A stretch of DNA of 64,000 bases from Dendrobates tinctorius (Eukaryota). Where the stretch lies: contig NW_027361682.1 in the NCBI RefSeq assembly GCF_039654945.1, positions 16,430,001 through 16,494,000 of the forward strand, read 5' to 3'. Shown piece after piece: positions 1,575 through 30,097 of this stretch. How positions within the stretch are numbered: the first letter of the stretch is position 1; each line of letters starts with the position of its first letter. A program made the position numbers and the translations under genes. The notes under the pieces are model-generated. The model did no database searches. It saw nothing but the letters and a program-made list of their open reading frames with translations, and was not told where the DNA came from.

Positions 1575-3845
1575 CAGCTGTAACCTACAGCAACATGCCA
1601 CGGCAGGATCTGCCCGAGCGCAACGTAACCCACAGCAACATACGACAGCACGGGGGCAAACGTAACCCACAGCAACATACGACAGCACGGGGGCAAACGT
1701 AACCCACAGCAACATACGACAGCACGGGGGCAAACGTAACCCACAGCAACATACGACAGCACGGGGGCAAACGTAACCCACAGCAACATACGACAGCACG
1801 AGGGCAAACGTAACCCACAGCAACATACGACAGCACAAGCGCAAAGTAACTCACAGCAACCAAGCCACCACAGGATCTGCCCAAGCACAATGTAATCCAC
1901 AGCAACATACCAACGCAGTATCTGCCCGAGCGCAATGTAATCCACGGCAACATGCCACCGGAGTATCTGCCAGAGCGCAATGTAACCCACAGCAACATAC
2001 TACGGCAACACGAGCGCAACGTAACCCACAGCAACATGCCACCGCAGGATCTGCCTGAGCACAAAGTAACCCATAGCAACATACTATAGCAGGATCCACG
2101 AGAGGAATGTAACCCACAGCAACATATTATGACAGGATCTGCACAAGTGCAACGTAACCTACAGCAACATACTATGGCAGCACGGGAGCAATGTAACCCA
2201 CAGCAACATGCCACTACAGGATCTGCCCGAGCGCAACGTAACCCACAGAAACATAGTACAGCAGGATCCACGGGAGCAACGTAACCCACAGCAACATGCC
2301 ACTACAGGATCAGCCCATGCGCAACTTAACTCATAGCAACATTACATACTACACCAGAATGCACATAAGAGCAATGTAAATCAATGCAACATGGCACCAC
2401 AGGATATGCACACGCACAACGTAACCCATAGCAACATACTACTGTTAGGCCGGCTAACCAAGAGAAGAACCAAGGATGCTGGCAAGTCGGAGGCCGCTCG
2501 TAGTGCTCTGGTCCAGCAGCCACAGACTACTAATCTGGTCATGGGTCCTGTGAATTTGCTGTAACCCATAGCAAAGTACTACATGAGTGTAACGTAACTC
2601 ATAGTAATCAAATGTAGCCTGTCAGCAACATATCACAGAAGTGCCACCTGCCTGCAAAACCCACAGTATCATACTACAGCAAAACCAACTTGGGAGCGGC
2701 GTAACCCATAGCAACAAAATGTAACATCAGCAACATCTCACGGAGGCTAGGCACGCACCGTAACCCACAGCAACATCTCACGGAGGATAGGCACGCACCA
2801 CAACCCACAGCAACATCTCACGGAGGAGGCTATGCCCAAATCGTAACCCATAGAAACATCTCACTGAGGCTAGGCACGCACCGTAACCCACAGCAACATC
2901 TCACGGAGGATAGGCACGCACCACAACCCACAGCAACATCTCACGGAGGAGGCTATGCCCAAATCGTAACCCATAGAAACATCTCACTGAGGCTAAGCAC
3001 GCACCGCAACATCTCACTGAGGCTAGGCACGCACCGCAACCCACAGCAACATCTCACTGAGGCTAGGCACGAATCGTAACCCATAGAAACATCTCACTGA
3101 GGCTAGGCACGCACCGCAACATCTCACGGAGGAGGCTATGCACAAATCGTAACCTATAGAAACATTTCACTGAGGCTAGGCACGCACCGCAACATCTCAC
3201 TGAAGCTAGGCACGCACCGCAACATCTCACTGAAGCTAGGCACGCACCGCAACATCTCACTGAAGCTAGGCACGCACCGCAACATCTCACTGAAGCTAGG
3301 CACGCACCGCAACATCTCACTGAAGCTAGGCACGCACCGCAACATCTCACTGAAGCTAGGCACGCACCGCAACATCTCACTGAAGCTAGGCACGCACCGC
3401 AACATCTCACTGAAGCTAGGCACGCACCGCAACATCTCACTGAAGCTAGGCACGCACCGCAACATCTCACTGAAGCTAGGCACGCACCGCAACATCTCAC
3501 TGAAGCTAGGCACGCACCGCAACATCTCACTGAAGCTAGGCACGCACCGCAACATCTCACTGAAGCTAGGCACGCACCGCAACATCTCACTGAAGCTAGG
3601 CACGCACCGCAACATCTCACTGAAGCTAGGCACGCACCGCAACATCTCACGGAGGCTAGGCACGCACCGCAACATCTCACGGAGGCTATGCACGAACCGT
3701 AACCCATAGAAACATCTCACTGATGCTAGGCACGCACTGCAACATCTCACTGAGGCTAGGCACGCACCGCAACATCTCACTGAGGCTAGGCACGCACCGC
3801 AACATCTCACACAGAGGCTAGGCAGGCACCGTAACCCATAGAAAC
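1575..3845. repeat. Compound minisatellite (39/45-bp gtaacccacagcaacat units evolving into a 30-bp cacgcaccgcaacatctcactgaagctagg unit)
   Basis: 39-bp units at about 1620-1850 and 45-bp variants to about 2450. A near-perfect 30-bp array runs about 3170-3690. Lies in an intron downstream of NARF coding exon 1. Confidence 0.95.
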
Positions 3846-19967: not shown

Positions 19968-20772
19968 CTGTGTAAAAGTTTTAGGCAGTTGTGGAAAAAA
20001 TCTGCAAAGTAAGAATAGTTTATAAAATAGAAGTGATGATAGTTTATTTTAACAACTAACAAAATGCAAAGTGAATGAACTAAACCCCATGAGTATTTGG
20101 TGACCGCCATTTACGTCCCAAACATCTTGGAGAACTGACCGCAGATCTTCTGTGGATGTCACTTGTGCAGATCCCTCTGTCTCTTCATGTGATCCCAGAC
20201 AGACGGGATGATGTGAGATCAGGGCTCTGTGGGGCCAGATCATCACTTCCAGGACTCCTCGCTCTTAATGACATTGGCTGGATGTTTGGGATTGTTGTTC
20301 TGCTGCAGAATAAAATTGTAATTTGTAATAAATCATTTAACACCATCAGGGAGGCGTCTGATTGGCTCCAATTTTATTCTATAGCAGAACAACGACCCCA
20401 ATGTCATTAAGATCGAGGAGTCCTGGAAGTGATGATCCGGCCCCACAGAGCCCTGATCTCACATCATCTGGTCTGTCTGGAATCACATGAAGAGACAGAG
20501 GGATCTGCACAAGTGACATCCAGAGAAGATCTGCGGTCAGTTCTCCAAGATGTTTGGGACAACCTCCTGCCGAGCTCCATCATAACCTGTGTACAAATGA
20601 TAAGTATGGAGAAGAAGTGAGGGAGGCAAAGGACGATCATCAAATACTGATGGGGTTTAGATTTCTCTTTCGTTCATTAACTTTGCATTTTGTTAATTGA
20701 TAAAAATAAATAATCTATTCACACTTGCATATTTGGAAGCTTCTTACTCTGCAGAATTTTTTCCTACAGTGC
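19968..20772. mobile_element. Tc1-derived foldback (palindromic) element
   Basis: Arms about 19988-20317 and 20369-20770 are reverse complements and include a decayed transposase C-terminus (DLRSVLQDVWDNL). Confidence 0.75.
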
Positions 20773-20791
20773 TGTGTATGGTGGACCATAC

Positions 20792-20874
20792 CATTCTTCA
20801 GTGTCACCAGACACACGGCCAGAGAAGGTATCCCCACCGGCAGGAGCTCACACAGAACTGAGAAGTGGTCGTAC
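20792..20874 (-). CDS. HEXD: HEXD exon 9
   Basis: [27 protein letters not shown], 83 nt. Confidence 0.95.
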
Positions 20875-20971
20875 CTGAAAAGTATTGAGCAGTGATTAAT
20901 TCCTAATGTAAATACAAAGGGAACCCCCAAACGAGATGGGGGTGCTAACATTACACTAGTGAGGAAAGTAC

Positions 20972-21167
20972 CTCTGCCAGCCAGTGATGGCCACTCCCTG
21001 CAGAATATCATGGGATATCTTCTGGACCACCTCTAGCCAACGTTTGTGGTTTTCCAAGTGATGTCCGATAAGGGTGAGCTGCTGGGAGGTCCCGGTGGCC
21101 CCCTTAAAGGCACTGGCCAGCCAGATCTTCTGGAAGCCGCTCTGTGAGTATTTTTCGATCAGTGCGA
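20972..21167 (-). CDS. HEXD: HEXD exon 8
   Basis: [25 protein letters not shown]...GVAITGWQ, 196 nt. Confidence 0.95.
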
Positions 21168-21263
21168 CTGCAAGAAATCCGCATCATCACAGCACAGTGG
21201 TGCCTCCCGTAGGCGGTGGCATGTATTGCTAGGTACCCTGTAGTAGATAATTATTTATGGTAC

Positions 21264-21335
21264 CTCTATTGTCAACATCTAGGTTTGGGGTGTAGTCCCA
21301 GATCATCGGCTCCACCAGTTTGGTCACTCCAGAGT
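21264..21335 (-). CDS. HEXD: HEXD exon 7
   Basis: SGVTKLVEPMIWDYTPNLDVDNR, 72 nt. Confidence 0.95.
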
Positions 21336-21434
21336 CTACCCAAGACAGAAAGCAGCAGAAGTGAGAAATGCCATGCATCCAGGTCTCTGAAGATACATCA
21401 CTATCAAAATTGTGAAGTCACCCTCTCTTCCCAC

Positions 21435-21618
21435 CTGTCAATTTCTGGGCAGATGCCCCTCTCAGCATATCATCCCAGGAGATGAGCTTGACACCTGGAT
21501 ATGTGGAAACCACATGTGAGGCTACTTTCTTCAGGTGGCAAATAAAGAGGTCTTCAACAGTCTGCCCGTTTTCAGAAAAAAAATTCTTGGACTCTTCTCC
21601 CTCCCCAAGATAGTAGAC
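21435..21618 (-). CDS. HEXD: HEXD exon 6
   Basis: VYYLGEGEESK...KLISWDDMLRGASAQKLT, 184 nt. Confidence 0.95.
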
Positions 21619-22016
21619 CTAGGTAAAAAGTGTGTATTTATATACAGTTCTGACCACTGATTCCTTTATACTTCGGTGACATATAAAGCTGCAGCAAAAC
21701 ATGGATTTTTGTGAGTACTCACCGTAAAATCCTTTTCTCCGAGACGCTCATTGGGGGACACAGAGACTGTGGGTGTGTGCTACTGCCGTCTGGAGGCTGA
21801 CACTAGGCATACAAAAAACAAGTTAGCTCCTCCTCCGCCGCATACACCCTCGCCCCGATAGCGGGCGGAAACCAGTTTAGTGCAAAAGCAGTAGGAGAAC
21901 ATCCAAAAATTAGCCTTAACGCAGAAAATCATATGTCTGAAAAAGGACCACCCTACATTAAATAAGGAATTATACTAATTAAATAAACAAGAGCCAACTG
22001 GCTATCAGGGTGGGTG

Positions 22017-22119
22017 CTGTGTCCCCCAATGAGCGTCTCGGAGAAAAGGATTTTACGGTGAGTACTCACAAAAATCCATGTTTCTCCTTCGTCTCATTGG
22101 GGGACACAGAGACTGTGGG
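22017..22119. repeat. DIRS internal complementary region (ICR)
   Basis: ...cacaaaaatccatg|ttt|ctccttcgtctcattgggggacacag... joins the element's 3' and 5' terminal sequences, as in the circular junction. Confidence 0.9.
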
Positions 22120-22182
22120 ACGTCCTAAAGCAGTCCCTGGGTGGGAGCACAACTCACCGATCCAAGCCGCATGCCCTCCTGT

Positions 22183-25020
22183 CTAAAGGTGTGCCACTGC
22201 TGCTTGGAGAATTTTCCTACCCAGACTCGCATCCGACGAGGCCTGAGTATGCACATTGTAATGCTTACAAAAAGTGTGCAGGCTGGACCAGGTTGCTGCT
22301 TTGCATACCTGCTCTGCCGAAGCCTGGTGCCGAAGCGCCCAAGAGGCGCCCACTGCCCGAGTTGAGTGCGCCCCTATCCCTGTTGGAATCGGTGCGCCTC
22401 TAATACGGTAAGCCTCCTGAATAGTTAGGCGAATCCATCTGGCTATGGTTGATCGTGAGGCTGCGAGACCCTTCCTGCGCCCTTCCGGAATCACAAACAA
22501 CGAGTCCGTCTGGCGAAAAGGTGCTGTCCTTGACACGTACCTCCTGAGAGCTCTTACCAGATCTAAAGAGTGGAGCGCCCTTTCCACTCTGTGTACTGGC
22601 GCTGGTCAAAACAAAGGCAGAACAATGTCCTCATTAATATGGAAAGAGGACACGACCTTCGGCAGAAAAGGTGGCGGTGGTCTAAGGACTACTTTATCCT
22701 TAAAAAAAGTCAGAAAAGGAGCTCTGCAAGATAATGCTCCTAACTCCGAGACCCGCCTAACGGAAGTTATCGCTACTAAGAATACAACCTTCCTGGAGAG
22801 ATATGACAATGAAATTTCCTGTAATGGTTCAAACGGGGCTTCCTGTAGGACACCCAGGACCAGGTTAAGGTCCCAGGCGTCTATGGGTGCTTTATAGGGG
22901 GGCACCAAATGAGAGACCCCCTGAATGAACGTCCTGACCTGCATATTGGTAGCGATCTTTCGCTGAAAAAGGGCCGACAAGGCCGAAATCTGCCTCCTAA
23001 GGGAACTTGGCGCCAACCCTGCGTCCAGGCCGGACTGCAGAAAAGCCAGGATGTTGGGGACTGAAAAGGATAATGGCGCAACCCTGTGTTCTCGACACCA
23101 ATGAAAGAAAACCTTCCAAGTGTTATGATAAATTTTCGCCGAGGCCAGCTTCCGGGCGCTAACCATTGTCGCAACCACTTCACGCCCAAATCCCGCCTGG
23201 GTCAGAATCCAAGATTCAACGGCCATGCCGTCAAACACAGGGCCCCTAAGTTCGGGTGGCAGATCGGCCCCTGAGACAGTAAGTCTGGCCGTTCCGGTAG
23301 ACGCCAAGGCACGTCTGCGAGGAGCTGCACTAGATCCGCGTACCATACTCGACGGGGCCAGTCCGGGGCCAGCAGAATTGCCGGGACCCCCTCTGTCTTG
23401 ATCTTCCTGATGACCCTTGGGAGAAGCGGCAGTGGGGGAAACAGGTATGGGAGCCGAAACTGGCTCCACGGTAGGACCAACGCATCCACCGCGATCGCTC
23501 GCGGGTCCTGAGACCGAGCGACAAACGTGCTCACCTTGGCGTTCTCCCTGGACGCCATCAGATCCACGTCTGGAGTCCCCCACCGTTGGCAAATCTGCTG
23601 GAAGAACTCGGGGTGAAGGGGCCATTCCCCGGCCGCAACGCCCTGTCGGCTTAGGAAATCTGCTGCCCAATTTTCCACACCTGGTATGTGAACTGCTGAG
23701 ATTGCCGAGTGGTGCCTCTCGGCCCAACGGAGCACATGCTCTATCTTGCGCATGGTTGCCCAGCTGCGCGTGCCTCCCTGGAGATTCACGTACGCCACTG
23801 CCGTGGCGTTGTCTGACTGAACTCGGACTGGGCGTCCTGCTAGCAAGTGCTGAAAACGCTGCAGCGCCAACCGCACCGCTCGAATCTCCAACAGGTTGAT
23901 CGGAAGACGAGCCTCCTGAGGCGACCATTGCCCCTGGGCCGTGTGGTGCCGGAAGATTGCCCCCCAGCCGAAAAGACTTGTATCGGTCGTGATCACCAAC
24001 CAATGATCTGGGGGAAAAGGCTTCCCCTGACGAAGAGAGGAGTCGTGTGTCCACCATTGAAGCGCCCGTCGAACCTGAGAGGGCAACCTGCACTGATGAT
24101 CGAGGGAGAACGGACTCCCGTCCCAAGCCGCTAAGAGAGCATGCTGCAGGGGACGGAGATGAAATTGAGCAAACGGAATTGCTTCCATCGCCGCCACCAT
24201 CCTTCCTAGAACCCTCATCCCGAACCGGATAGTGTGAGGGTCCGGTTGTTGAAGACTTCGGACTCCCTGCCGGAGCGCCCGAGCCTTGTCCTGAGGGAGA
24301 ATTACCAACCCTCGGGAAGTGTCGAAAATCATCCCCAGGAATAAAATCCTCTGAGCTGGGGTAAGGGAAGATTTCTTCCCGTTGATCAACCATCCTAGGC
24401 GAGATAGGGTATCCAGTGTGATGCTCACATTCTCCTCGCATGCCCGAAAGGACGGCCCCTTTACTAAGAGGTCGTCTAAGTACGGCAAAACCACTATGCC
24501 CCGAGAATGTAGAACGGCCATGACGACCGCCATCACTTTCGTGAATATCCTGGGGGCCGTGGCCAACCCGAAAGGTAGGGCCACAAACTGAAAATGCCGG
24601 CCCTCGATTGCAAACCGAAGGAACCTTTGATGCGGGGGAAAAATAGGGATGTGCAGGTAGGCATTCTGGACATCGATCGAGGCCAAATATTCTCCGTGCT
24701 CCATGGACGATATGACCGACCGGAGAGATTCCATGCGAAAACGCCTGACCCTGATGAACCTGTTCAGGAGCTTTAAGTCCAGAACCGGCCTTACTGTTCC
24801 GTCCTTCTTGGGAACTGCGAACAGATTGGAATAAAATCCTTGGGTCTTCTCGCACTCTGGTACAGAGACAATGACCCCGTTGCGCCGCAACACCTCGATG
24901 GCCCCTAGCAATGCCTCTGCCCGGGATTCTGTTTTGGGACGCCGGGAAAGAAAAAATCGTCTTGGCGGATCTTTGACAAACTCTATTTTGTACCCGGAAC
25001 ACACTAATTCTGCCACCCAT
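22183..25020 (-). pseudogene. DIRS tyrosine recombinase ORF, one in-frame nonsense codon
   Basis: ORFs 22606-25020 and 22183-22587 are in the same frame, separated by TGA at 22606-22608 (DIVLPLF*PAPVHRVERALHSLD). Catalytic motifs RRVSEL, HSTR and ATWSS...HY are present. Overlaps the RT ORF. Confidence 0.85.
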
Positions 25021-25034
25021 GCGTCGCGTGCCAC
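23202..25034 (-). CDS. DIRS reverse transcriptase-RNase H-adenine methyltransferase-like ORF (uninterrupted)
   Basis: RT motifs LPFGL and YLDD; RNase H motifs TTDTS, INLLE, SDN and HIPGVENWAADFLSR; C-terminal MT-like DLMAS...AVDAL...YLFPP. Confidence 0.9.
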   Translation of the reverse strand: MARDAWVAELVCSGYKIEFVKDPPRRFFLSRRPKTESRAEALLGAIEVLRRNGVIVSVPECEKTQGFYSNLFAVPKKDGTVRPVLDLKLLNRFIRVRRFRMESLRSVISSMEHGEYLASIDVQNAYLHIPIFPPHQRFLRFAIEGRHFQFVALPFGLATAPRIFTKVMAVVMAVLHSRGIVVLPYLDDLLVKGPSFRACEENVSITLDTLSRLGWLINGKKSSLTPAQRILFLGMIFDTSRGLVILPQDKARALRQGVRSLQQPDPHTIRFGMRVLGRMVAAMEAIPFAQFHLRPLQHALLAAWDGSPFSLDHQCRLPSQVRRALQWWTHDSSLRQGKPFPPDHWLVITTDTSLFGWGAIFRHHTAQGQWSPQEARLPINLLEIRAVRLALQRFQHLLAGRPVRVQSDNATAVAYVNLQGGTRSWATMRKIEHVLRWAERHHSAISAVHIPGVENWAADFLSRQGVAAGEWPLHPEFFQQICQRWGTPDVDLMASRENAKVSTFVARSQDPRAIAVDALVLPWSQFRLPYLFPPLPLLPRVIRKIKTEGVPAILLAPDWPRRVWYADLVQLLADVPWRLPERPDLLSQGPICHPNLGALCLTAWPLNLGF

Positions 25035-25107
25035 CGTGACCCAGACGCGGCAGAACCTGCGCAGACGTCCGCCTACTCTGCTGTCCTCGGGTACTGGATG
25101 CCTCGAG

Positions 25108-26478
25108 TCATTTCGCTGAGGGCTTCTGGAACCTGGCCCCCCTTGATCTGGGCGGGCGGCCCCGCATCCTACCCAGCGGGTTGGTTCTATACGTGACCTG
25201 ACGCTCCTTGTCTTGGTTATAGCGAGCTGGGGTGGAGGTACTGGCCGCTACCATCCACCCGGGGGTGCGAAATGCTCGAAAGCGCGCCTGAGGTTGACGA
25301 AAAGGCGGCATAACCTTTTGCTGTGGAAGGAAGCTGTTTTTTCCCCCTGTAGCATCTGAAATGAGCTTGTCTAATTTCTCCCCAAATAGCCGATTACCCT
25401 GAAAAGGCAGGGAAGTCAAAGACTTCTTAGAAATAGAATCAGCCCGCCATAACCTTAATCACAAGGCTCTCCTAATGGCGATTGCATTTGCTGCCGCTAC
25501 AGCCGCGCCATTAGCCGCATCCAAGGATGCATTAATTAAATAGTCACCCGCCATCGCGATCTGACTTGCTATCTCCGCCACTTCCGTCGGCAAATCTCTA
25601 TCCTGTAGGACCTTGTTTAAAGAATCTGACCATGACATCATGGCTTTGGCTACCCATGTTGCCGCAAAAGGAAAGAGCGCTGATCCCGATGCTTCATACA
25701 CCGAGTGAGCTAAACCTTCTATGAGTCGATCCGTGGGGTCCTTAATGGAAGAACCGCTAGGTACTGACAACAAGGACCTTGAAGCTAGGCATGACACTGG
25801 GGGATCCACTACCGGAGATTCCGCCCATTTTTTACAAAGTTCCGATGCGAACGGATATCTCGTTTCCAGCGTTTTTTGTCCTGAAAAACGTTTGTCTGGA
25901 TGTTCGCTATGCCGCTGCACTATATCCTCGAACTCAGGATGAGTGCTAAATACTCTATGTTGTCTCCTGGTCTTCTTAAAGGATACCTTATGACCTGCGG
26001 TTCAATAAGACTGTCTACCGTCTCCCGGTACCCCGGGGTATCCAGGTCCAAGGACTATTCCCAGTCATCACCTGAACTCTGCTCGCTCCCAGAAAATGGT
26101 GACGGTGAGCGAGATGCCGCACTCACGGATGCTGAGGCACCGGAGGGGCCAGGAGACGCAGTACGGGCTCTTTTCCTGTGCGTCTGCCTAGAGAGTGTGC
26201 GGCCCCTGCAGGCCGGAGGCTCTTGTGAGGTGGATGACCCCTCCCAAACAGGCGAGCTGTCATCTCTACCCCTATCCGGGGCCTGAAGGGTCTCAATCGC
26301 CTTCGTGAGCGAAACCATGGACCGAGAGAGTGATAACGCCCATTCTGGGGGATCCAGACCCCTGGGCTCTGTCGCCGGGGAGGGCTCCTGGGCGCGTTCG
26401 GAGTCGCAGGCTTCACATAACTTAATAGTTTGCGCTCGTGGGAACATCACCCCACTGCGTTTTTCCTTTCCCAGACAT
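25108..26478 (-). pseudogene. DIRS gag-like ORF1, disrupted
   Basis: Fragments 26055-26501, 25459-25920 (SPVVDPPV, IKDPTDR, AIRRAL*) and 25108-25419 (LPFQGNRLFG). Two stops and at least one frameshift. Confidence 0.8.
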
Positions 26479-28014
26479 ACTGCTGGCGTCGGCCCACACA
26501 CAAAAAATCCCTTAAAGGCTTGGGGGGGGGGGGGTAGGCGGAGGGGGAGGAGGGTACTGTGTAGTGCCTTAGTATGGCTCCGGGACGGGGTGGCACTTAC
26601 CCGCTCCTGCGCGTCTCTCCCCGTGCTTCAGTTCGCGCCTCACTCCTGGTAGGCTGCGATTCCTCTGTGATCGCGGCCTACCCTGCCTTGCCGCCGGGGC
26701 CTCAATTTAATCCGGCGCCCGCCCCCCATCTCCAAGGCGCAAGGCGGCGCTTCCGCCCGAGGCCCAGGCCGAAGCCGCGGGCTAAATTTAGAAGCGGTCC
26801 GCCCGACCGCTACCCCGGCCGCCCGCCTCCCCATGCCCGGCTGACGACGGGGGGGGCGGCGCCGGAGATGACATGCGCCCAGTGCGGCGCTTCCGCCCGC
26901 GGCCCACGCGGGCTAAATTAGAGCCAGTCCGCCCGCCTGCGGCAGACCGCTACCTCGGCCATCCGGCTGCAGCTCCCCACAGGCTCCCGGACCGCGCCAA
27001 TACCCGGAGGGAGGCGAACCAGGTTAGAGGAGCGGAGGGAAAGGTGTGTGGGGGGGGGAGAGAAAGGGGAAAGCGTGCCTTTCCGAAAACGCTGCCCAGG
27101 GCCCTCCACTCGCTCCAGCACATACCTGAGGTACTCTGGTTAAGACGGTGCAGGCACCCTAACTCCAACCGCCTTGCCGGGGCGAGGAGAGGGACCGTCT
27201 GCCGCCATGCAGCACCGCCGTCATGCGTTGGTGGAGTCATGGGGGCCGCACAGACTAGTCTTGTGCCTCTGTGCAAGCCCATGGTTTCAATACCTAGGGG
27301 TGGACAGGGCTAAGTCTGGCCTAATGTCCCACGTCGTGGGAGAGGAAACGTGGAGGGACACTCGCACGTGGTCGCCCGTTGCTGGTTTGGGGAAATCGGA
27401 TCCTTTCAATAGGATGCGTTGCCCCTGTCTTATCTTCATAAAACAAAAAAACAAAGAAAAAAATAGATGTCTGGGGAAAAGTCCCAGATATGTCCCTCGG
27501 TGCGGGAAAGGATACGCGGAGGCGATACTCAACGCGTGCTCGCCCGTTGTTGGTTTGGGGAGATCGGACCCTTTCTATAGGATCCGTCGCCCCTGTCTCA
27601 TCTTCATGGTAAACTAGAAAAAAAAAAAAAAAAATAGTCTGGAGAGATCCAGACTGCGTGTGCCTCCATAAGACACTAAGCAAAAACTGGTTTCCGCCCG
27701 CTATCGAGGCGAGGGTGTATGCGGCGGAGGAGGAGCTAACTTGTTTTTTGTATGCCTAGTGTCAGCCTCCAGACGGCAGTAGCACACACCCACAGTCTCT
27801 GTGTCCCCCAATGAGACGAAGGAGAAATAATGTTCTCTCTTCCTGGTGGCTCTGGGGCAACAGAAAGTCAAATCTTCTACCAGCTTCTGATGGTTCAGTG
27901 TCTGGTCTTGGACCCCTAATGATGGGCCAGTTGTAGAGTACCCTCCCCCCTAATAAACAGATGTGGACCTGTGGACCCCCTCTACTATTAGTGCATATGT
28001 ATAAGATATTGTAC

Positions 28015-28179
28015 CTCATCTGAGCCGATATGAAGCCAGCGTAGACCAGGATGGAGCTCCATCATTTGTCTTATCATGGCATGGAGAAGCTGGTGTGACT
28101 CCTTCCTATGAGGGTTTAGGCTGTTCGGGTACATCGGGATCTCTCTCAGGTGGGCAAACTCCTTATGCTTCAGGACAAA
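28015..28179 (-). CDS. HEXD: HEXD exon 5 (catalytic HIGSDE)
   Basis: [13 protein letters not shown]...[16 protein letters not shown]20 DE pair, 165 nt. Confidence 0.96.
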
Positions 28180-28256
28180 CTATAAAAAGAAAGAACACAG
28201 AAATTAGGACCATGAGATCAGGAGGAAAAGCCCATCACCATCCATATGGTACATAC

Positions 28257-28344
28257 CTCCATGTGTCCAAACGTCTGAATGAGAGGAATGACTTCTAAAT
28301 GGTTAATTTGTGCCAGTCTCAGAATCTCACGGATTTCTTGAGGA
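28257..28344 (-). CDS. HEXD: HEXD exon 4
   Basis: [29 protein letters not shown], 88 nt. Confidence 0.96.
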
Positions 28345-28394
28345 CTGCAAAAATATCAGCAATTTAAAGGGGGAAACAAACTGGTATGTCAGTA

Positions 28395-29875
28395 TTGTAG
28401 TAGTTATATTCTTGTACATAGGGGCAGTATTATAGTAGTTATATTCTTATACATGGGGGCAGTATTATAGTAGTTATATTCTTGTACATAGGGGCAGTAT
28501 TATAGTAGTTATATTCTTGTACATAGGGGCAGTATTATAGTAGTTATATTCTTATACATGGGTGCAGTATTATAGTAGTTATATTCTTGTACATAGGGGC
28601 AGTATTATAGTAGCTATATTCTTATACATGGGGGCAGTATTATAGTTATATTCTTGTACATAGGGGCAGTATTATAGTAGTTATATTCTTGTGTACGGAG
28701 CAGTATTATAGTAGTTATATTCTTATACATGGGTGCAGTATTATAGTAGTTATATTCTTGTACATAGGGGCAGTATTACAGTAGCTATATTCTTATACAT
28801 GGGGGCAGTATTATAGTAGTTATATTCTTGTACATAGGGGCAGTATTATAGTAGTTATATTCTTATACATAAGGGTCAGTATTATTTTAGTTATATTCTT
28901 GTACATAGGTGCAGTATTATAGTAGTTATATTCTTGTACATAGGAGCAGTATTATAGTAGTTATATTCTTGTACATAGGAGCAGAATTATAGTAGTTATA
29001 TTCTTGTACATAGGAGCAGTGTTATAGTAGTTATATTCTTGCACATAGGGGGCAGTATTATAGAAGTTATATTCTTGTACATAGGAGGCAGTATTATAGT
29101 AGTTATATTCTTGTACATAGGAGCAGTATTATAGTAGTTATATTCTTGCACATAGGGGCAGTATTATAGTAGTTATATTCTTGTACATAGGGGGCAGTAT
29201 TATAGTAGTTATATTCTTGTACATAGGGGACAGTATTATAGTAGTTATATTCTTGTACATAGGAGGCAGTATTATAGTAGTTATATTCTTGTACATGGGG
29301 CAGTATTATAGTAGTTACATTCTTGTACATAAGGGGCAGTATTATATTAGTTATATTCTTGTACATAGGGGACAGTATTATAGTAGTTATATTCTTGTAC
29401 ATAGGGGCAGTATTATAGTAGTTATATTCTTGTACATAGGGGACAGTATTATAGTAGATATATTCTTGTACACAGGAGCAGTATTATAATAGTTATATTC
29501 TTGTACATAGGGGGCAGTATGATTGTAGTTATACTCTTGTACATAGAGGCAGTATTATAGTAGTTATATTCTTGTACATAGAGGCAGTATTATAGTAGTT
29601 ATATTCTTGTACATAGGGGCAGTATTATAGTAGTTATATTCTTGTACATAGGGGGCAGTATTATAGTAGGTATATTCTTGTACATAGGGGTCAGTATTAT
29701 AGTAGTTATATTCTTGTACATAGGGGGCAGTATTATAGTAGTTATATTCTTGTACATAGGAGCAGTATTATAGTAGTTAAATTTTTGTACATAGGGGCAG
29801 TATTATAGTAGTTATATTCTTGTACATGGGGCAGTATTATAGTAGTTATATTCTTGCACAGGGTCAGTATTATGA
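28395..29875 (-). repeat. 35-37-bp minisatellite (ggggcagtattatagtagttatattcttgtacata)
   Basis: Tandem array filling HEXD intron 3; same family as 14352-14950, opposite orientation. Confidence 0.95.
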
Positions 29876-29987
29876 TAGTTAAATGTCATAGCCTTGTCTC
29901 TTGTTACTGATTACTGCACCACTGATGGGTACAGTTTTCCTTTTATCGTGTTGCACAATGACCAATTACTATAGGGGCTGTGACCAC

Positions 29988-30097
29988 CTGTAGGCGTGAG
30001 CAGCTCGCAGCGGGAGGAGTTCTTCGTAATATGGAAAAGTGTCTTCATATTCTATCAGCAGCCCGGTGGCTCCGAGGGAAGAGAAGAGGGGCAAAAC
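29988..30097 (-). CDS. HEXD: HEXD exon 3
   Basis: [23 protein letters not shown]...AHAY, 110 nt. Confidence 0.95.

What the first reader, a model, noticed from the sequence alone, without database searches (positions are those of the whole stretch)
27325..27660. Duplicated structured RNA module with compensatory changes in the DIRS 5' leader
Seen: two ~116-nt copies (27491-27607 and 27325-27439) lie between the 5' ITR and gag. On the element strand each is preceded by a small hairpin plus a U-tract and starts AUGAAGAURAGACAGGGG. Hairpin 1 reads GGGGC-GA-CG-GAUCCU/AGGGUC-CG-A-UC-U-CCCC in one copy and GGGGC-AA-...-UU-U-CCCC in the other, a G-C to A-U covariation; a G-U wobble in it is valid only on the element strand. 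After an AAACCARCAAC linker, hairpin 2 reads ACGCG..GAG/CUC..CGCGU versus ACGUG..GAG/CUC..CACGU, a second covariation. Both copies end in GGGACA. Inference: stem-preserving divergence points to a selected RNA element, such as an IRES or translation-control element, a packaging or dimerisation signal, a nuclease block, or a new ribozyme. I know of no described structured leader module for vertebrate DIRS.
Basis: partly seen in the sequence, partly recalled or inferred. Interest (0 to 1): 0.75.

Follow-up and report, generated by a model that had tools for sequence, protein, structure and literature searches.

The report
Twin-hairpin RNA module in frog DIRS leaders
A jumping gene of the DIRS type in a poison-frog genome carries, just inside its 5' end, two tandem copies of a ~115-base module whose two hairpins have been kept intact by matching base changes across related elements, so it is probably a working RNA signal of unknown function.

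Summary
A 6.1-kb DIRS retrotransposon lies on the minus strand (21697-27827). Its leader holds a 168-nt tandem duplication. Each unit is a small hairpin, a U-tract and a 115-117-nt module with two hairpins.

I collected 19 such modules from 10 elements in three dendrobatid genome sources: this window, Dendrobates tinctorius and Ranitomeya imitator.
- All nine intact 5' ends carry two modules, starting 60-110 nt after the 5' ITR.
- 93% of stem cells are standard pairs, against about 50% when partners are slid.
- 8 of 27 pairs show double changes. A phylogeny-aware null gives 2.5 +/- 1.1.
- A structure-blind alignment still gives P = 0.0005 for pairing and P = 0.03 for double-change pairs.
- Single changes give G-U three times as often as A-C, which points to the sense RNA strand.
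- Apart from a 26-nt motif, the stretch ending in module 1 is the only part of the ~1.1-kb leader conserved between the Dendrobates-type and Ranitomeya-type elements.

Limits:
- Rfam has no match.
- More distant frog DIRS lack the module.
- Transcription is not shown.
- Function is untested. My best guess is a cis-acting signal on the genomic RNA, such as Gag recognition or packaging. A DNA-level promoter repeat is the main rival.

The scan noted the same module before on other DNA of this genome (s1-364471, s1-389178).

The parts
21697..27827 (-). Whole DIRS-type retrotransposon that hosts the module
   Evidence: Inverted terminal repeats 27684-27815 versus 21747-21878 are 99% complementary. 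The internal complementary region 22017-22119 matches the outer 39 nt of the 5' ITR and the outer 67 nt of the 3' end. Pfam finds RVT_1 and RNase H in ORF 23202-25034, a weak Phage_integrase hit in 22183-22587, and a weak LAP2alpha (gag) hit in 25459-25920.
27684..27827 (-). 5' inverted terminal repeat
27637..27654 (-). Small hairpin A (GUCUGGA/UCCAGAC)
   Evidence: It is present in all four Dendrobates-type elements. L103b and L003 carry a related GGGUCU(G)/(C)AGACCC hairpin. L002, L104 and L105 lack it.
27618..27634 (-). U-tract A (17 T on the element strand)
   Evidence: A U-rich tract precedes every one of the modules inspected.
27491..27607 (-). Module A (position 1), 117 nt
   Evidence: Covariance-model hit of 121.6 bits. 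Its MFE is -41.3 kcal/mol with z = -2.2.
27557..27593 (-). Module A hairpin 1. It has a lower stem GGGG/CCCC with a C.U mismatch and a bulged A, and a variable apical stem.
27503..27546 (-). Module A hairpin 2. It has an outer stem CGGG/CCCG, then GAG/CUU, a middle stem ACGCG/CGCGU, and a tip GAG/CUC.
27470..27488 (-). Small hairpin B (UCUGGG/CCCAGA)
27440..27466 (-). U-rich tract B
27325..27439 (-). Module B (position 2), 115 nt
   Evidence: Covariance-model hit of 125.4 bits. The family-majority letters at 27337 and 27371 restore two pairs that are mismatched in this copy.
27389..27425 (-). Module B hairpin 1
27337..27378 (-). Module B hairpin 2
26520..27324 (-). Rest of the leader. It is GC-rich, holds 140-nt repeats, varies in length among copies, and runs down to about where gag homology begins.

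Best explanation
The stretch is a tandemly duplicated, about 115-nt twin-hairpin domain at the 5' end of the long leader of one clade of DIRS retrotransposons in dendrobatid frogs. Its base pairing is maintained by selection acting on the sense-strand RNA.

Shown here:
- The anatomy of the module.
- Its fixed place 60-110 nt inside the 5' ITR.
- Its presence in two copies in every intact element sampled.
- Stem-preserving substitutions above a phylogeny-aware null.
- A sense-strand bias towards G-U wobble pairs.
- An invariant lower stem in hairpin 1 with a C.U mismatch, and a bulged A kept in 18 of 19 modules.

Inferred, not shown:
- The module is part of the genomic RNA. This rests on analogy with Dictyostelium DIRS-1, whose transcript starts at the left terminal repeat.
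- It acts in cis on that RNA.

My most likely mechanism, at roughly 30% on its own, is that it is a recognition site for the element's Gag protein. That would make it a packaging-type signal, with the two copies giving two binding sites. RNA stability, nuclear export and translation control are other possible RNA-level roles.
For: - Anatomy and repeat.
- Sampling: 19 modules from 10 elements, all downstream of a 5' ITR in sense orientation except one rearranged copy, and 9 of 9 intact 5' ends carry two modules.
- Individual MFE folds recover both hairpins in 17 of 19 modules.
- 93.0% of 485 stem cells are standard pairs, against 39-57% with partners slid. 8 of 27 pairs have changes on both sides.
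- Phylogeny-aware null, with the 3'-arm changes re-thrown on the tree: 86.2 +/- 1.6% paired and 2.5 +/- 1.1 double-change pairs. Neither observed value was reached in 2000 simulations.
- Structure-blind MAFFT alignment, using the structure of window module A alone and leaving that module out of the count: 91.3% versus 86.0 +/- 1.7 (P = 0.0005), and 6 versus 3.0 double-change pairs (P = 0.034).
- The middle stem of hairpin 2 occurs as ACGCG/CGCGU, ACGUG/CACGU, ACGG/CCGU and ACUGG/CCAGU. The last differs by a G-C to U-A transversion pair.
- Single changes give Watson-Crick to G-U 14.7 times and Watson-Crick to A-C 4.9 times. Unpaired columns show no such bias. Pairing is 93.0% on the sense strand and 87.2% on the antisense strand.
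- Paired columns change 1.24 times per column, unpaired columns 2.2 times. 21 of 26 invariant columns are paired.
- Between this element and the Ranitomeya elements (RT about 71% identical), the first 1.9 kb aligns only over the ITR plus module 1, and over one 26-nt island.
- In the window and 11 frog loci searched (343 kb), significant matches (E < 0.001) lie only in DIRS leaders, so the module is not a free-standing SINE.
- The DIRS-1 transcript starts at the left repeat (PMC7192593).
Against: - No RNA evidence. All runs laid were contigs, and none is on record as RNA.
- An all-against-all column test shows that phylogeny alone gives many equally strong associations. The three best stem pairs rank 17, 20 and 33 of 2342, and without APC correction P = 0.12.
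- Only about seven independent compensatory events are seen. Almost all are transition pairs, some in CpGs.
- MFE z-scores of single modules are modest and similar on both strands, at -1.56 and -1.49.
- The module is CpG-rich and tandemly repeated, which also fits a promoter.
- It is absent from DIRS with 52-65% RT identity, apart from a hairpin 2 core in L003.
- No palindromic loop that could form a kissing dimer was seen, and there is no conserved long-range complementarity.
- Gag binding is pure inference.
Confidence: 0.55

Rival explanations
1. The units are DNA-level promoter or enhancer repeats, like the tandem monomers of the mouse LINE-1 5' UTR. The conserved GC-rich arms would be factor-binding sites, and the hairpin potential would be incidental or secondary. 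This could also hold alongside an RNA role.
For: - The units are tandem repeats at the extreme 5' end, and there are always two of them.
- CpG observed/expected is about 1.0-1.2 in position-1 modules.
- CACGTG E-box palindromes occur in most Dendrobates-type modules.
- Retroelements need promoter elements inside or close to the transcribed part.
- The ITRs of DIRS-1 have promoter activity (PMC4482531 abstract).
Against: - Compensatory changes and the 3:1 excess of G-U over A-C outcomes are not expected for double-stranded DNA sites.
- The E-boxes are absent from all Ranitomeya modules.
- The apical stems change sequence while keeping their pairing.
Confidence: 0.2
2. The unit is a neutral tandem duplication. 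The hairpins are inherited palindromes in young, CpG-rich copies, and the apparent covariation comes from shared ancestry plus frequent CpG transitions.
For: - The window's two double changes are transitions, and in hairpin 2 both lie in CpGs.
- The background of phylogenetic covariation is high.
- Few independent events are seen.
- The ITRs are 99% identical, so this copy is young.
Against: - The null that keeps the tree and the number of changes per column is exceeded.
- There is a transversion double change.
- There is a strand bias.
- Module 1, together with the adjoining ITR and post-ITR stretch, is a conserved island in a leader that otherwise cannot be aligned.
Confidence: 0.15
3. The module is an IRES or another translation-control element for gag.
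For: - The leader is about 1.1 kb, GC-rich, strongly folding (z about -5 to -6) and holds upstream AUGs.
- U-rich tracts flank the modules.
Against: - The modules lie about 800 nt upstream of the gag start.
- The upstream AUG is not conserved.
- The sequence between the modules and gag is hypervariable.
Confidence: 0.07
4. The module is a self-cleaving ribozyme, an exonuclease-resistant RNA, or a captured host RNA or SINE.
For: Read on the opposite strand, each module ends in an A-rich tail, which resembles a retroposed SINE.
Against: - No Rfam family matches at E <= 1 on either strand.
- No copy was found outside DIRS leaders in 343 kb.
- The repeat period includes the hairpin and the tract, so this is a tandem duplication and not two separate insertions.
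- No pseudoknot or conserved catalytic core is evident.
Confidence: 0.03

Closest known systems
Retroviral and LTR-retrotransposon leader signals, such as the double-hairpin packaging signals of gammaretroviruses and HIV-1 SL1-SL4 (from general knowledge)
   Same: Several adjacent stem-loops lie in the 5' leader between the terminal repeat and gag. Their stems are kept by compensatory change, and they have conserved bulges or internal loops.
   Different: There is no sequence or covariance-model similarity to any Rfam family. There is no primer-binding site and no palindromic loop. The element is of the DIRS order, with a tyrosine recombinase and a different replication scheme. Each unit is preceded by a U-tract. 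Binding and function are untested.
Mouse LINE-1 5' UTR monomers (from general knowledge)
   Same: Both are tandemly repeated, CpG-rich units of 100-200 bp at the 5' end of a retroelement.
   Different: There are only two units here, and they show RNA-type covariation and a wobble bias. Promoter activity is not tested.
The twin-hairpin module noted earlier by this scan on other DNA of the same genome (s1-364471, s1-389178)
   Same: The description matches: a module of about 90-115 nt with two adjacent hairpins just inside the 5' end of frog DIRS, tandemly duplicated.
   Different: This is another copy. I tested the claim on sequences fetched independently from D. tinctorius and R. imitator assemblies.
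Dictyostelium DIRS-1 (PMC7192593)
   Same: The element architecture is the same: ITRs, an internal complementary region, gag, RT/RNase H and a tyrosine recombinase. Its transcript starts at the left repeat.
   Different: The papers I read describe no leader RNA structure for DIRS-1. [quoted passage not shown]

Membership tests
DIRS-order retrotransposon (the host element) | Reverse transcriptase with RNase H | tested here: met
   RVT_1 at E = 6e-19 and RT_RNaseH at 5e-6 in ORF 23202-25034. The closest proteins are frog DIRS-like RTs.
DIRS-order retrotransposon (the host element) | Tyrosine recombinase instead of a DDE integrase | tested here: inconclusive
   Phage_integrase at E = 0.0029, 17.9 bits, which is below the Pfam cut-off, in ORF 22183-22587.
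DIRS-order retrotransposon (the host element) | Inverted terminal repeats plus an internal complementary region that matches both outer ends | tested here: met
   (pairs I2, I3, I5)
Any Rfam family (ribozymes, IRES, packaging signals, tRNA-like and others) | Covariance-model match | tested here: not met
   cmscan of 20000-30000 on both strands, at E <= 1, gave 0 matches.
Evolutionarily conserved structured RNA | Base pairs kept by compensatory and wobble changes above a phylogeny-aware background | tested here: met
   Support is moderate: there are few independent events, and the all-pairs test is weak.
Evolutionarily conserved structured RNA | The stretch is transcribed on the proposed strand | not testable with these tools
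   Only contigs of runs of unknown kind were available.
Retroviral-type packaging/dimerisation signal | Self-complementary loop for kissing dimers | tested here: not met
   The loops AUAGAA/AUUGAA and UAUCGC/UGUCC are not palindromic.
Retroviral-type packaging/dimerisation signal | Specific Gag binding and a requirement for packaging | not testable with these tools
   Needs bench work.
LINE-1-like promoter monomers | Tandem units at the 5' end | tested here: met
   Two units are present in 9 of 9 intact elements.
LINE-1-like promoter monomers | Promoter activity of the unit | not testable with these tools
   Needs reporter assays.
Protein-coding upstream ORF | Reading frame kept across copies | tested here: not met
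   The AUG frame of module A stops after 10 codons. The AUG is absent in the Ranitomeya modules and in two D. tinctorius modules. Unit spacing is 118-168 nt with indels that are not multiples of three. ORF 27321-27683 has no Pfam hit.

The most novel reading that the evidence does not exclude
The module is the Gag-recognition (packaging) signal of these elements. That would be the first cis-acting RNA signal defined for the DIRS order, and a handle on a replication cycle whose priming and RNA selection steps are still unknown.
Probability: 0.25. Interest if true: 0.7.

Novelty: new variant of a known kind. Interest (0 to 1): 0.5.

Why it matters
DIRS elements make up a large share of some amphibian genomes. 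How they choose, copy and package their RNA is still largely unknown. The papers I read say the primer for reverse transcription has not been found (PMC7192593).

A short, conserved, structure-constrained domain at the 5' end of the RNA is a concrete candidate for one of these steps. It can be tested directly by probing, binding and reporter assays.

Its narrow distribution limits the reach of the finding. The scan had also already met it on other DNA of this genome.

Tried and rejected
- Rfam scan: nothing.
- Pattern scans of public collections: viral contigs gave nothing. Metagenome contigs gave 94 hits, listed as loci L008-L087. The covariance model scored none of the 80 loci searched, so they are chance matches.
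- Covariance-model searches of more distant frog DIRS:
  - L005 (Anomaloglossus), L006 (Pseudophryne) and L007 (Xenopus laevis) have no module in their leaders.
  - L003 (Ranitomeya, 65% RT identity) keeps only a hairpin 2 core at 3576-3607 (E = 0.0055).
  - A hit at L007:22099-22206 (E = 2.6e-4) lies in a Penelope-like GIY-YIG coding stretch, and I take it for chance.
- Reads: all four runs laid were Logan contigs. They show that the family is very abundant, but they give no transcription start, strand or splicing.
- My early reading that gag starts at the ATG at 27282, with an intron after 27125, is rejected. That ATG is not conserved, and gag homology starts near 26500.
- Long-range pairing:
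  - No complementarity of 11 nt or more between the modules and distant parts of the element is shared between elements.
  - The long helix that closes the window's leader fold is not conserved in relatives.
- Thermodynamics does not tell the strands apart.
- Exact-protein look-up of the window's 804-aa ORF found nothing.

Full report
**What is there**

The finding lies in the leader of a DIRS-type retrotransposon on the minus strand, at 21697-27827.
- The element has 99% complementary inverted terminal repeats (27684-27815 versus 21747-21878).
- Its internal complementary region (22017-22119) matches the outer 39 nt of the 5' repeat and the outer 67 nt of the 3' end.
- It has an RT/RNase H ORF, a weak tyrosine-recombinase hit and a weak LAP2alpha-like gag hit.
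- The nearest RT proteins are from Dendrobates tinctorius (78-90%) and Ranitomeya imitator (about 71%), so the window comes from a dendrobatid frog.

The leader directly after the 5' repeat holds a 168-nt tandem duplication. Each unit has three parts:
- a small hairpin (27637-27654 and 27470-27488);
- a T-rich tract (27618-27634 and 27440-27466);
- a module (A at 27491-27607, B at 27325-27439).

The two modules are 82-83% identical. The start motif occurs only twice in the window.

RNAfold predicts the same two hairpins in both copies. The two covariations and the U-G wobble are as described. Copy B also has one disruptive change, and both double changes are transitions (in hairpin 2 both lie in CpGs). 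Two copies alone would therefore not be convincing.

One point needed correction. The ATG at 27282 is not conserved in relatives. The gag of related elements has an N-terminal CxxC...CxxC motif and starts at L004:8671. It aligns to the window only from about 26483-26520 downward. The leader is thus about 1.1 kb long, and the modules sit at its 5' end, roughly 800 nt upstream of gag.

**Relatives**

I used the RT protein to fetch loci and a covariance model built from the first eight modules. Together they found 19 modules in 10 elements:
- the window;
- three D. tinctorius elements (L001, L004, L102);
- six R. imitator copies (L002, L103a, L103b, L103c, L104, L105).

All modules lie 60-110 nt downstream of a 5' ITR in sense orientation. 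The exception is L103c, a rearranged copy without an ITR. All nine intact 5' ends have two modules, with start-to-start spacing of 118-168 nt.

A tree of the modules has three groups:
- Ranitomeya position 2;
- Ranitomeya position 1;
- all Dendrobates-type modules mixed together.

In the Dendrobates-type elements the second copy therefore comes from a later duplication or from gene conversion. L004's second copy is the exception and sits on a long branch.

No significant module match was found outside DIRS leaders in the 343 kb of frog DNA searched.

More distant frog DIRS do not have the module:
- L003 (65% RT identity) keeps only a hairpin 2 core.
- L005 (Anomaloglossus), L006 (Pseudophryne) and L007 (Xenopus) have nothing in their leaders.

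**Is the structure under selection?**

- Pairing. On the model-guided alignment, 93.0% of 485 stem cells are standard pairs, against 39-57% when partners are slid by 1-3 columns. 8 of 27 pairs have changes on both sides.
- Phylogeny-aware null. Relatedness inflates such counts, so I kept the tree and each 3' column's number of changes and re-threw those changes on branches in proportion to branch length. This gives 86.2 +/- 1.6% paired and 2.5 +/- 1.1 double-change pairs. Neither observed value was reached in 2000 simulations.
- Alignment bias. I repeated the test on a structure-blind MAFFT alignment, using the MFE structure of window module A alone and leaving that module out of the counts. 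The result is 91.3% versus 86.0 +/- 1.7 (P = 0.0005), 6 versus 3.0 double-change pairs (P = 0.034), and 20 versus 7.2 cells (P = 0.0035).
- Individual folds. These recover both hairpins in 17 of 19 modules. They show four mutually complementary versions of the hairpin 2 middle stem: ACGCG/CGCGU, ACGUG/CACGU, ACGG/CCGU and ACUGG/CCAGU. The last one involves a transversion pair.
- Conservation. Paired columns change about half as often as unpaired ones. 21 of 26 invariant columns are paired.
- Invariant lower stem. The lower stem of hairpin 1, with its C.U mismatch, is invariant. Its bulged A is kept in 18 of 19 modules.
- Family majority. The majority letters at 27337 and 27371 restore two pairs that are mismatched in the window's module B.

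A weaker result must be stated too. In an all-against-all column association test, many non-structural pairs score as high as the stem pairs. The best three stem pairs rank 17, 20 and 33 of 2342. P is 0.007 with APC correction and 0.12 without.

I count about seven independent compensatory events. The support is real but moderate.

**Which strand, and RNA or DNA?**

Single changes in stems lead from a Watson-Crick pair to G-U 14.7 times and to A-C 4.9 times. The reverse steps show the same bias (8.4 versus 2.3). Unpaired columns show no matching mutational bias: 36.7 versus 36.1.

Pairing is 93.0% on the sense strand and 87.2% on the antisense strand. This favours an RNA of the element's sense strand over a double-stranded DNA site or an antisense or cDNA structure.

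Folding energies do not separate the strands.

**Conservation island**

Between the window element and the four full-length Ranitomeya elements compared (L002, L103a, L104, L105), the first 1.9 kb aligns in only two places. One is positions 1-335, which cover the ITR, the post-ITR box and module 1. The other is a 26-nt motif at 26764-26789. The rest of the leader is GC-rich, repeat-bearing and variable in length among copies.

**Function**

Nothing here shows function.
- Transcription is inferred from Dictyostelium DIRS-1, whose RNA starts at the left repeat (PMC7192593). The runs I could lay were contigs of unknown kind.
- Rfam has no match.
- The loops are not palindromic.
- There is no conserved long-range complementarity.
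- The upstream AUG and the reading frame are not conserved.
- The distance to gag argues against an IRES acting at the start codon.

I favour a cis-acting signal on the genomic RNA, most likely a Gag recognition or packaging site. The reasons are its place at the 5' end, its invariant bulged lower stem with variable but paired apical stems, and its constant duplication. The main rival is a DNA-level promoter repeat, as in mouse LINE-1 monomers, and it may hold alongside an RNA role. The units are CpG-rich, tandem and partly carry E-boxes, but that reading does not explain the compensation or the wobble bias.

**Novelty**

The paper library holds no description of a structured leader in DIRS elements. 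The scan itself noted the same module earlier on other DNA of this genome (s1-364471, s1-389178). My tests on independently fetched sequences agree with that note.

I file this as a new variant of a known kind: cis-acting leader structures of retroelements. Interest is moderate because the clade is narrow and the function is open.

Ancestral states were used only inside scripts, to count changes in the 115-nt non-coding module.

Noticed in passing
window 26764-26789 (-); L002:16806-16831: A 26-nt motif, AAATTTAGCCCGCGGCTTCGGCCTGG, is the only other leader stretch conserved (92-96%) between this element and three of the four Ranitomeya elements compared (L002, L103a, L104; no hit in L105). It contains a GGC-UUCG-GCC tetraloop-type hairpin. 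A diverged second copy lies 140 nt upstream, at about 26904-26929.
   Followed up: partly
window 26436-27105: This GC-rich part of the leader holds 140-nt direct repeats. Its contig depth is far lower than that of its flanks in four runs, and there are joints of varying length. It is therefore hypervariable or often absent among family copies.
   Followed up: partly
window about 26480-26520 (-): There is no ATG where related elements start gag. The ORF there opens with GTG at 26501. The gag region is also split over at least two frames (26055-26501 and 25459-25920).
   Followed up: partly
window 28316-29478: A 35-bp satellite array (unit CAGTATTATAGTAGTTATATTCTTGTACATAGGGG) starts about 490 bp outside the 5' ITR.
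   Followed up: no
window 20040-20712: A nested palindrome with 163-nt arms that are 96% complementary, plus outer arms. It is probably a foldback or MITE-type element downstream of the DIRS.
   Followed up: no
window 22606-25020 (-): An 804-aa ORF without any Pfam hit overlaps the RT ORF in another frame and runs towards the recombinase ORF. This is the long ORF overlap that other notes of this scan discuss.
   Followed up: no
L007:22099-22206: A weak covariance-model hit (E = 2.6e-4) with a hairpin-1-like GGGUGACGGGUCC...GGACCC stem after a T-run. It lies inside a Penelope-like GIY-YIG coding stretch of Xenopus laevis and is probably chance.
   Followed up: partly
L103:19512-19627: A lone position-2-type module without an ITR, next to a short satellite. 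It is a rearranged or 5'-truncated copy.
   Followed up: partly
window 27655-27683 (-) and the same place in the other frog DIRS loci: A post-ITR box, CAGTTT..TTAGTGTC..GGAGGCACAC, is recognisable in all nine module-bearing elements. Diverged forms occur in L003, L005, L006 and L007. In the window it folds as a small GUGUCU/AGGCAC hairpin.
   Followed up: partly
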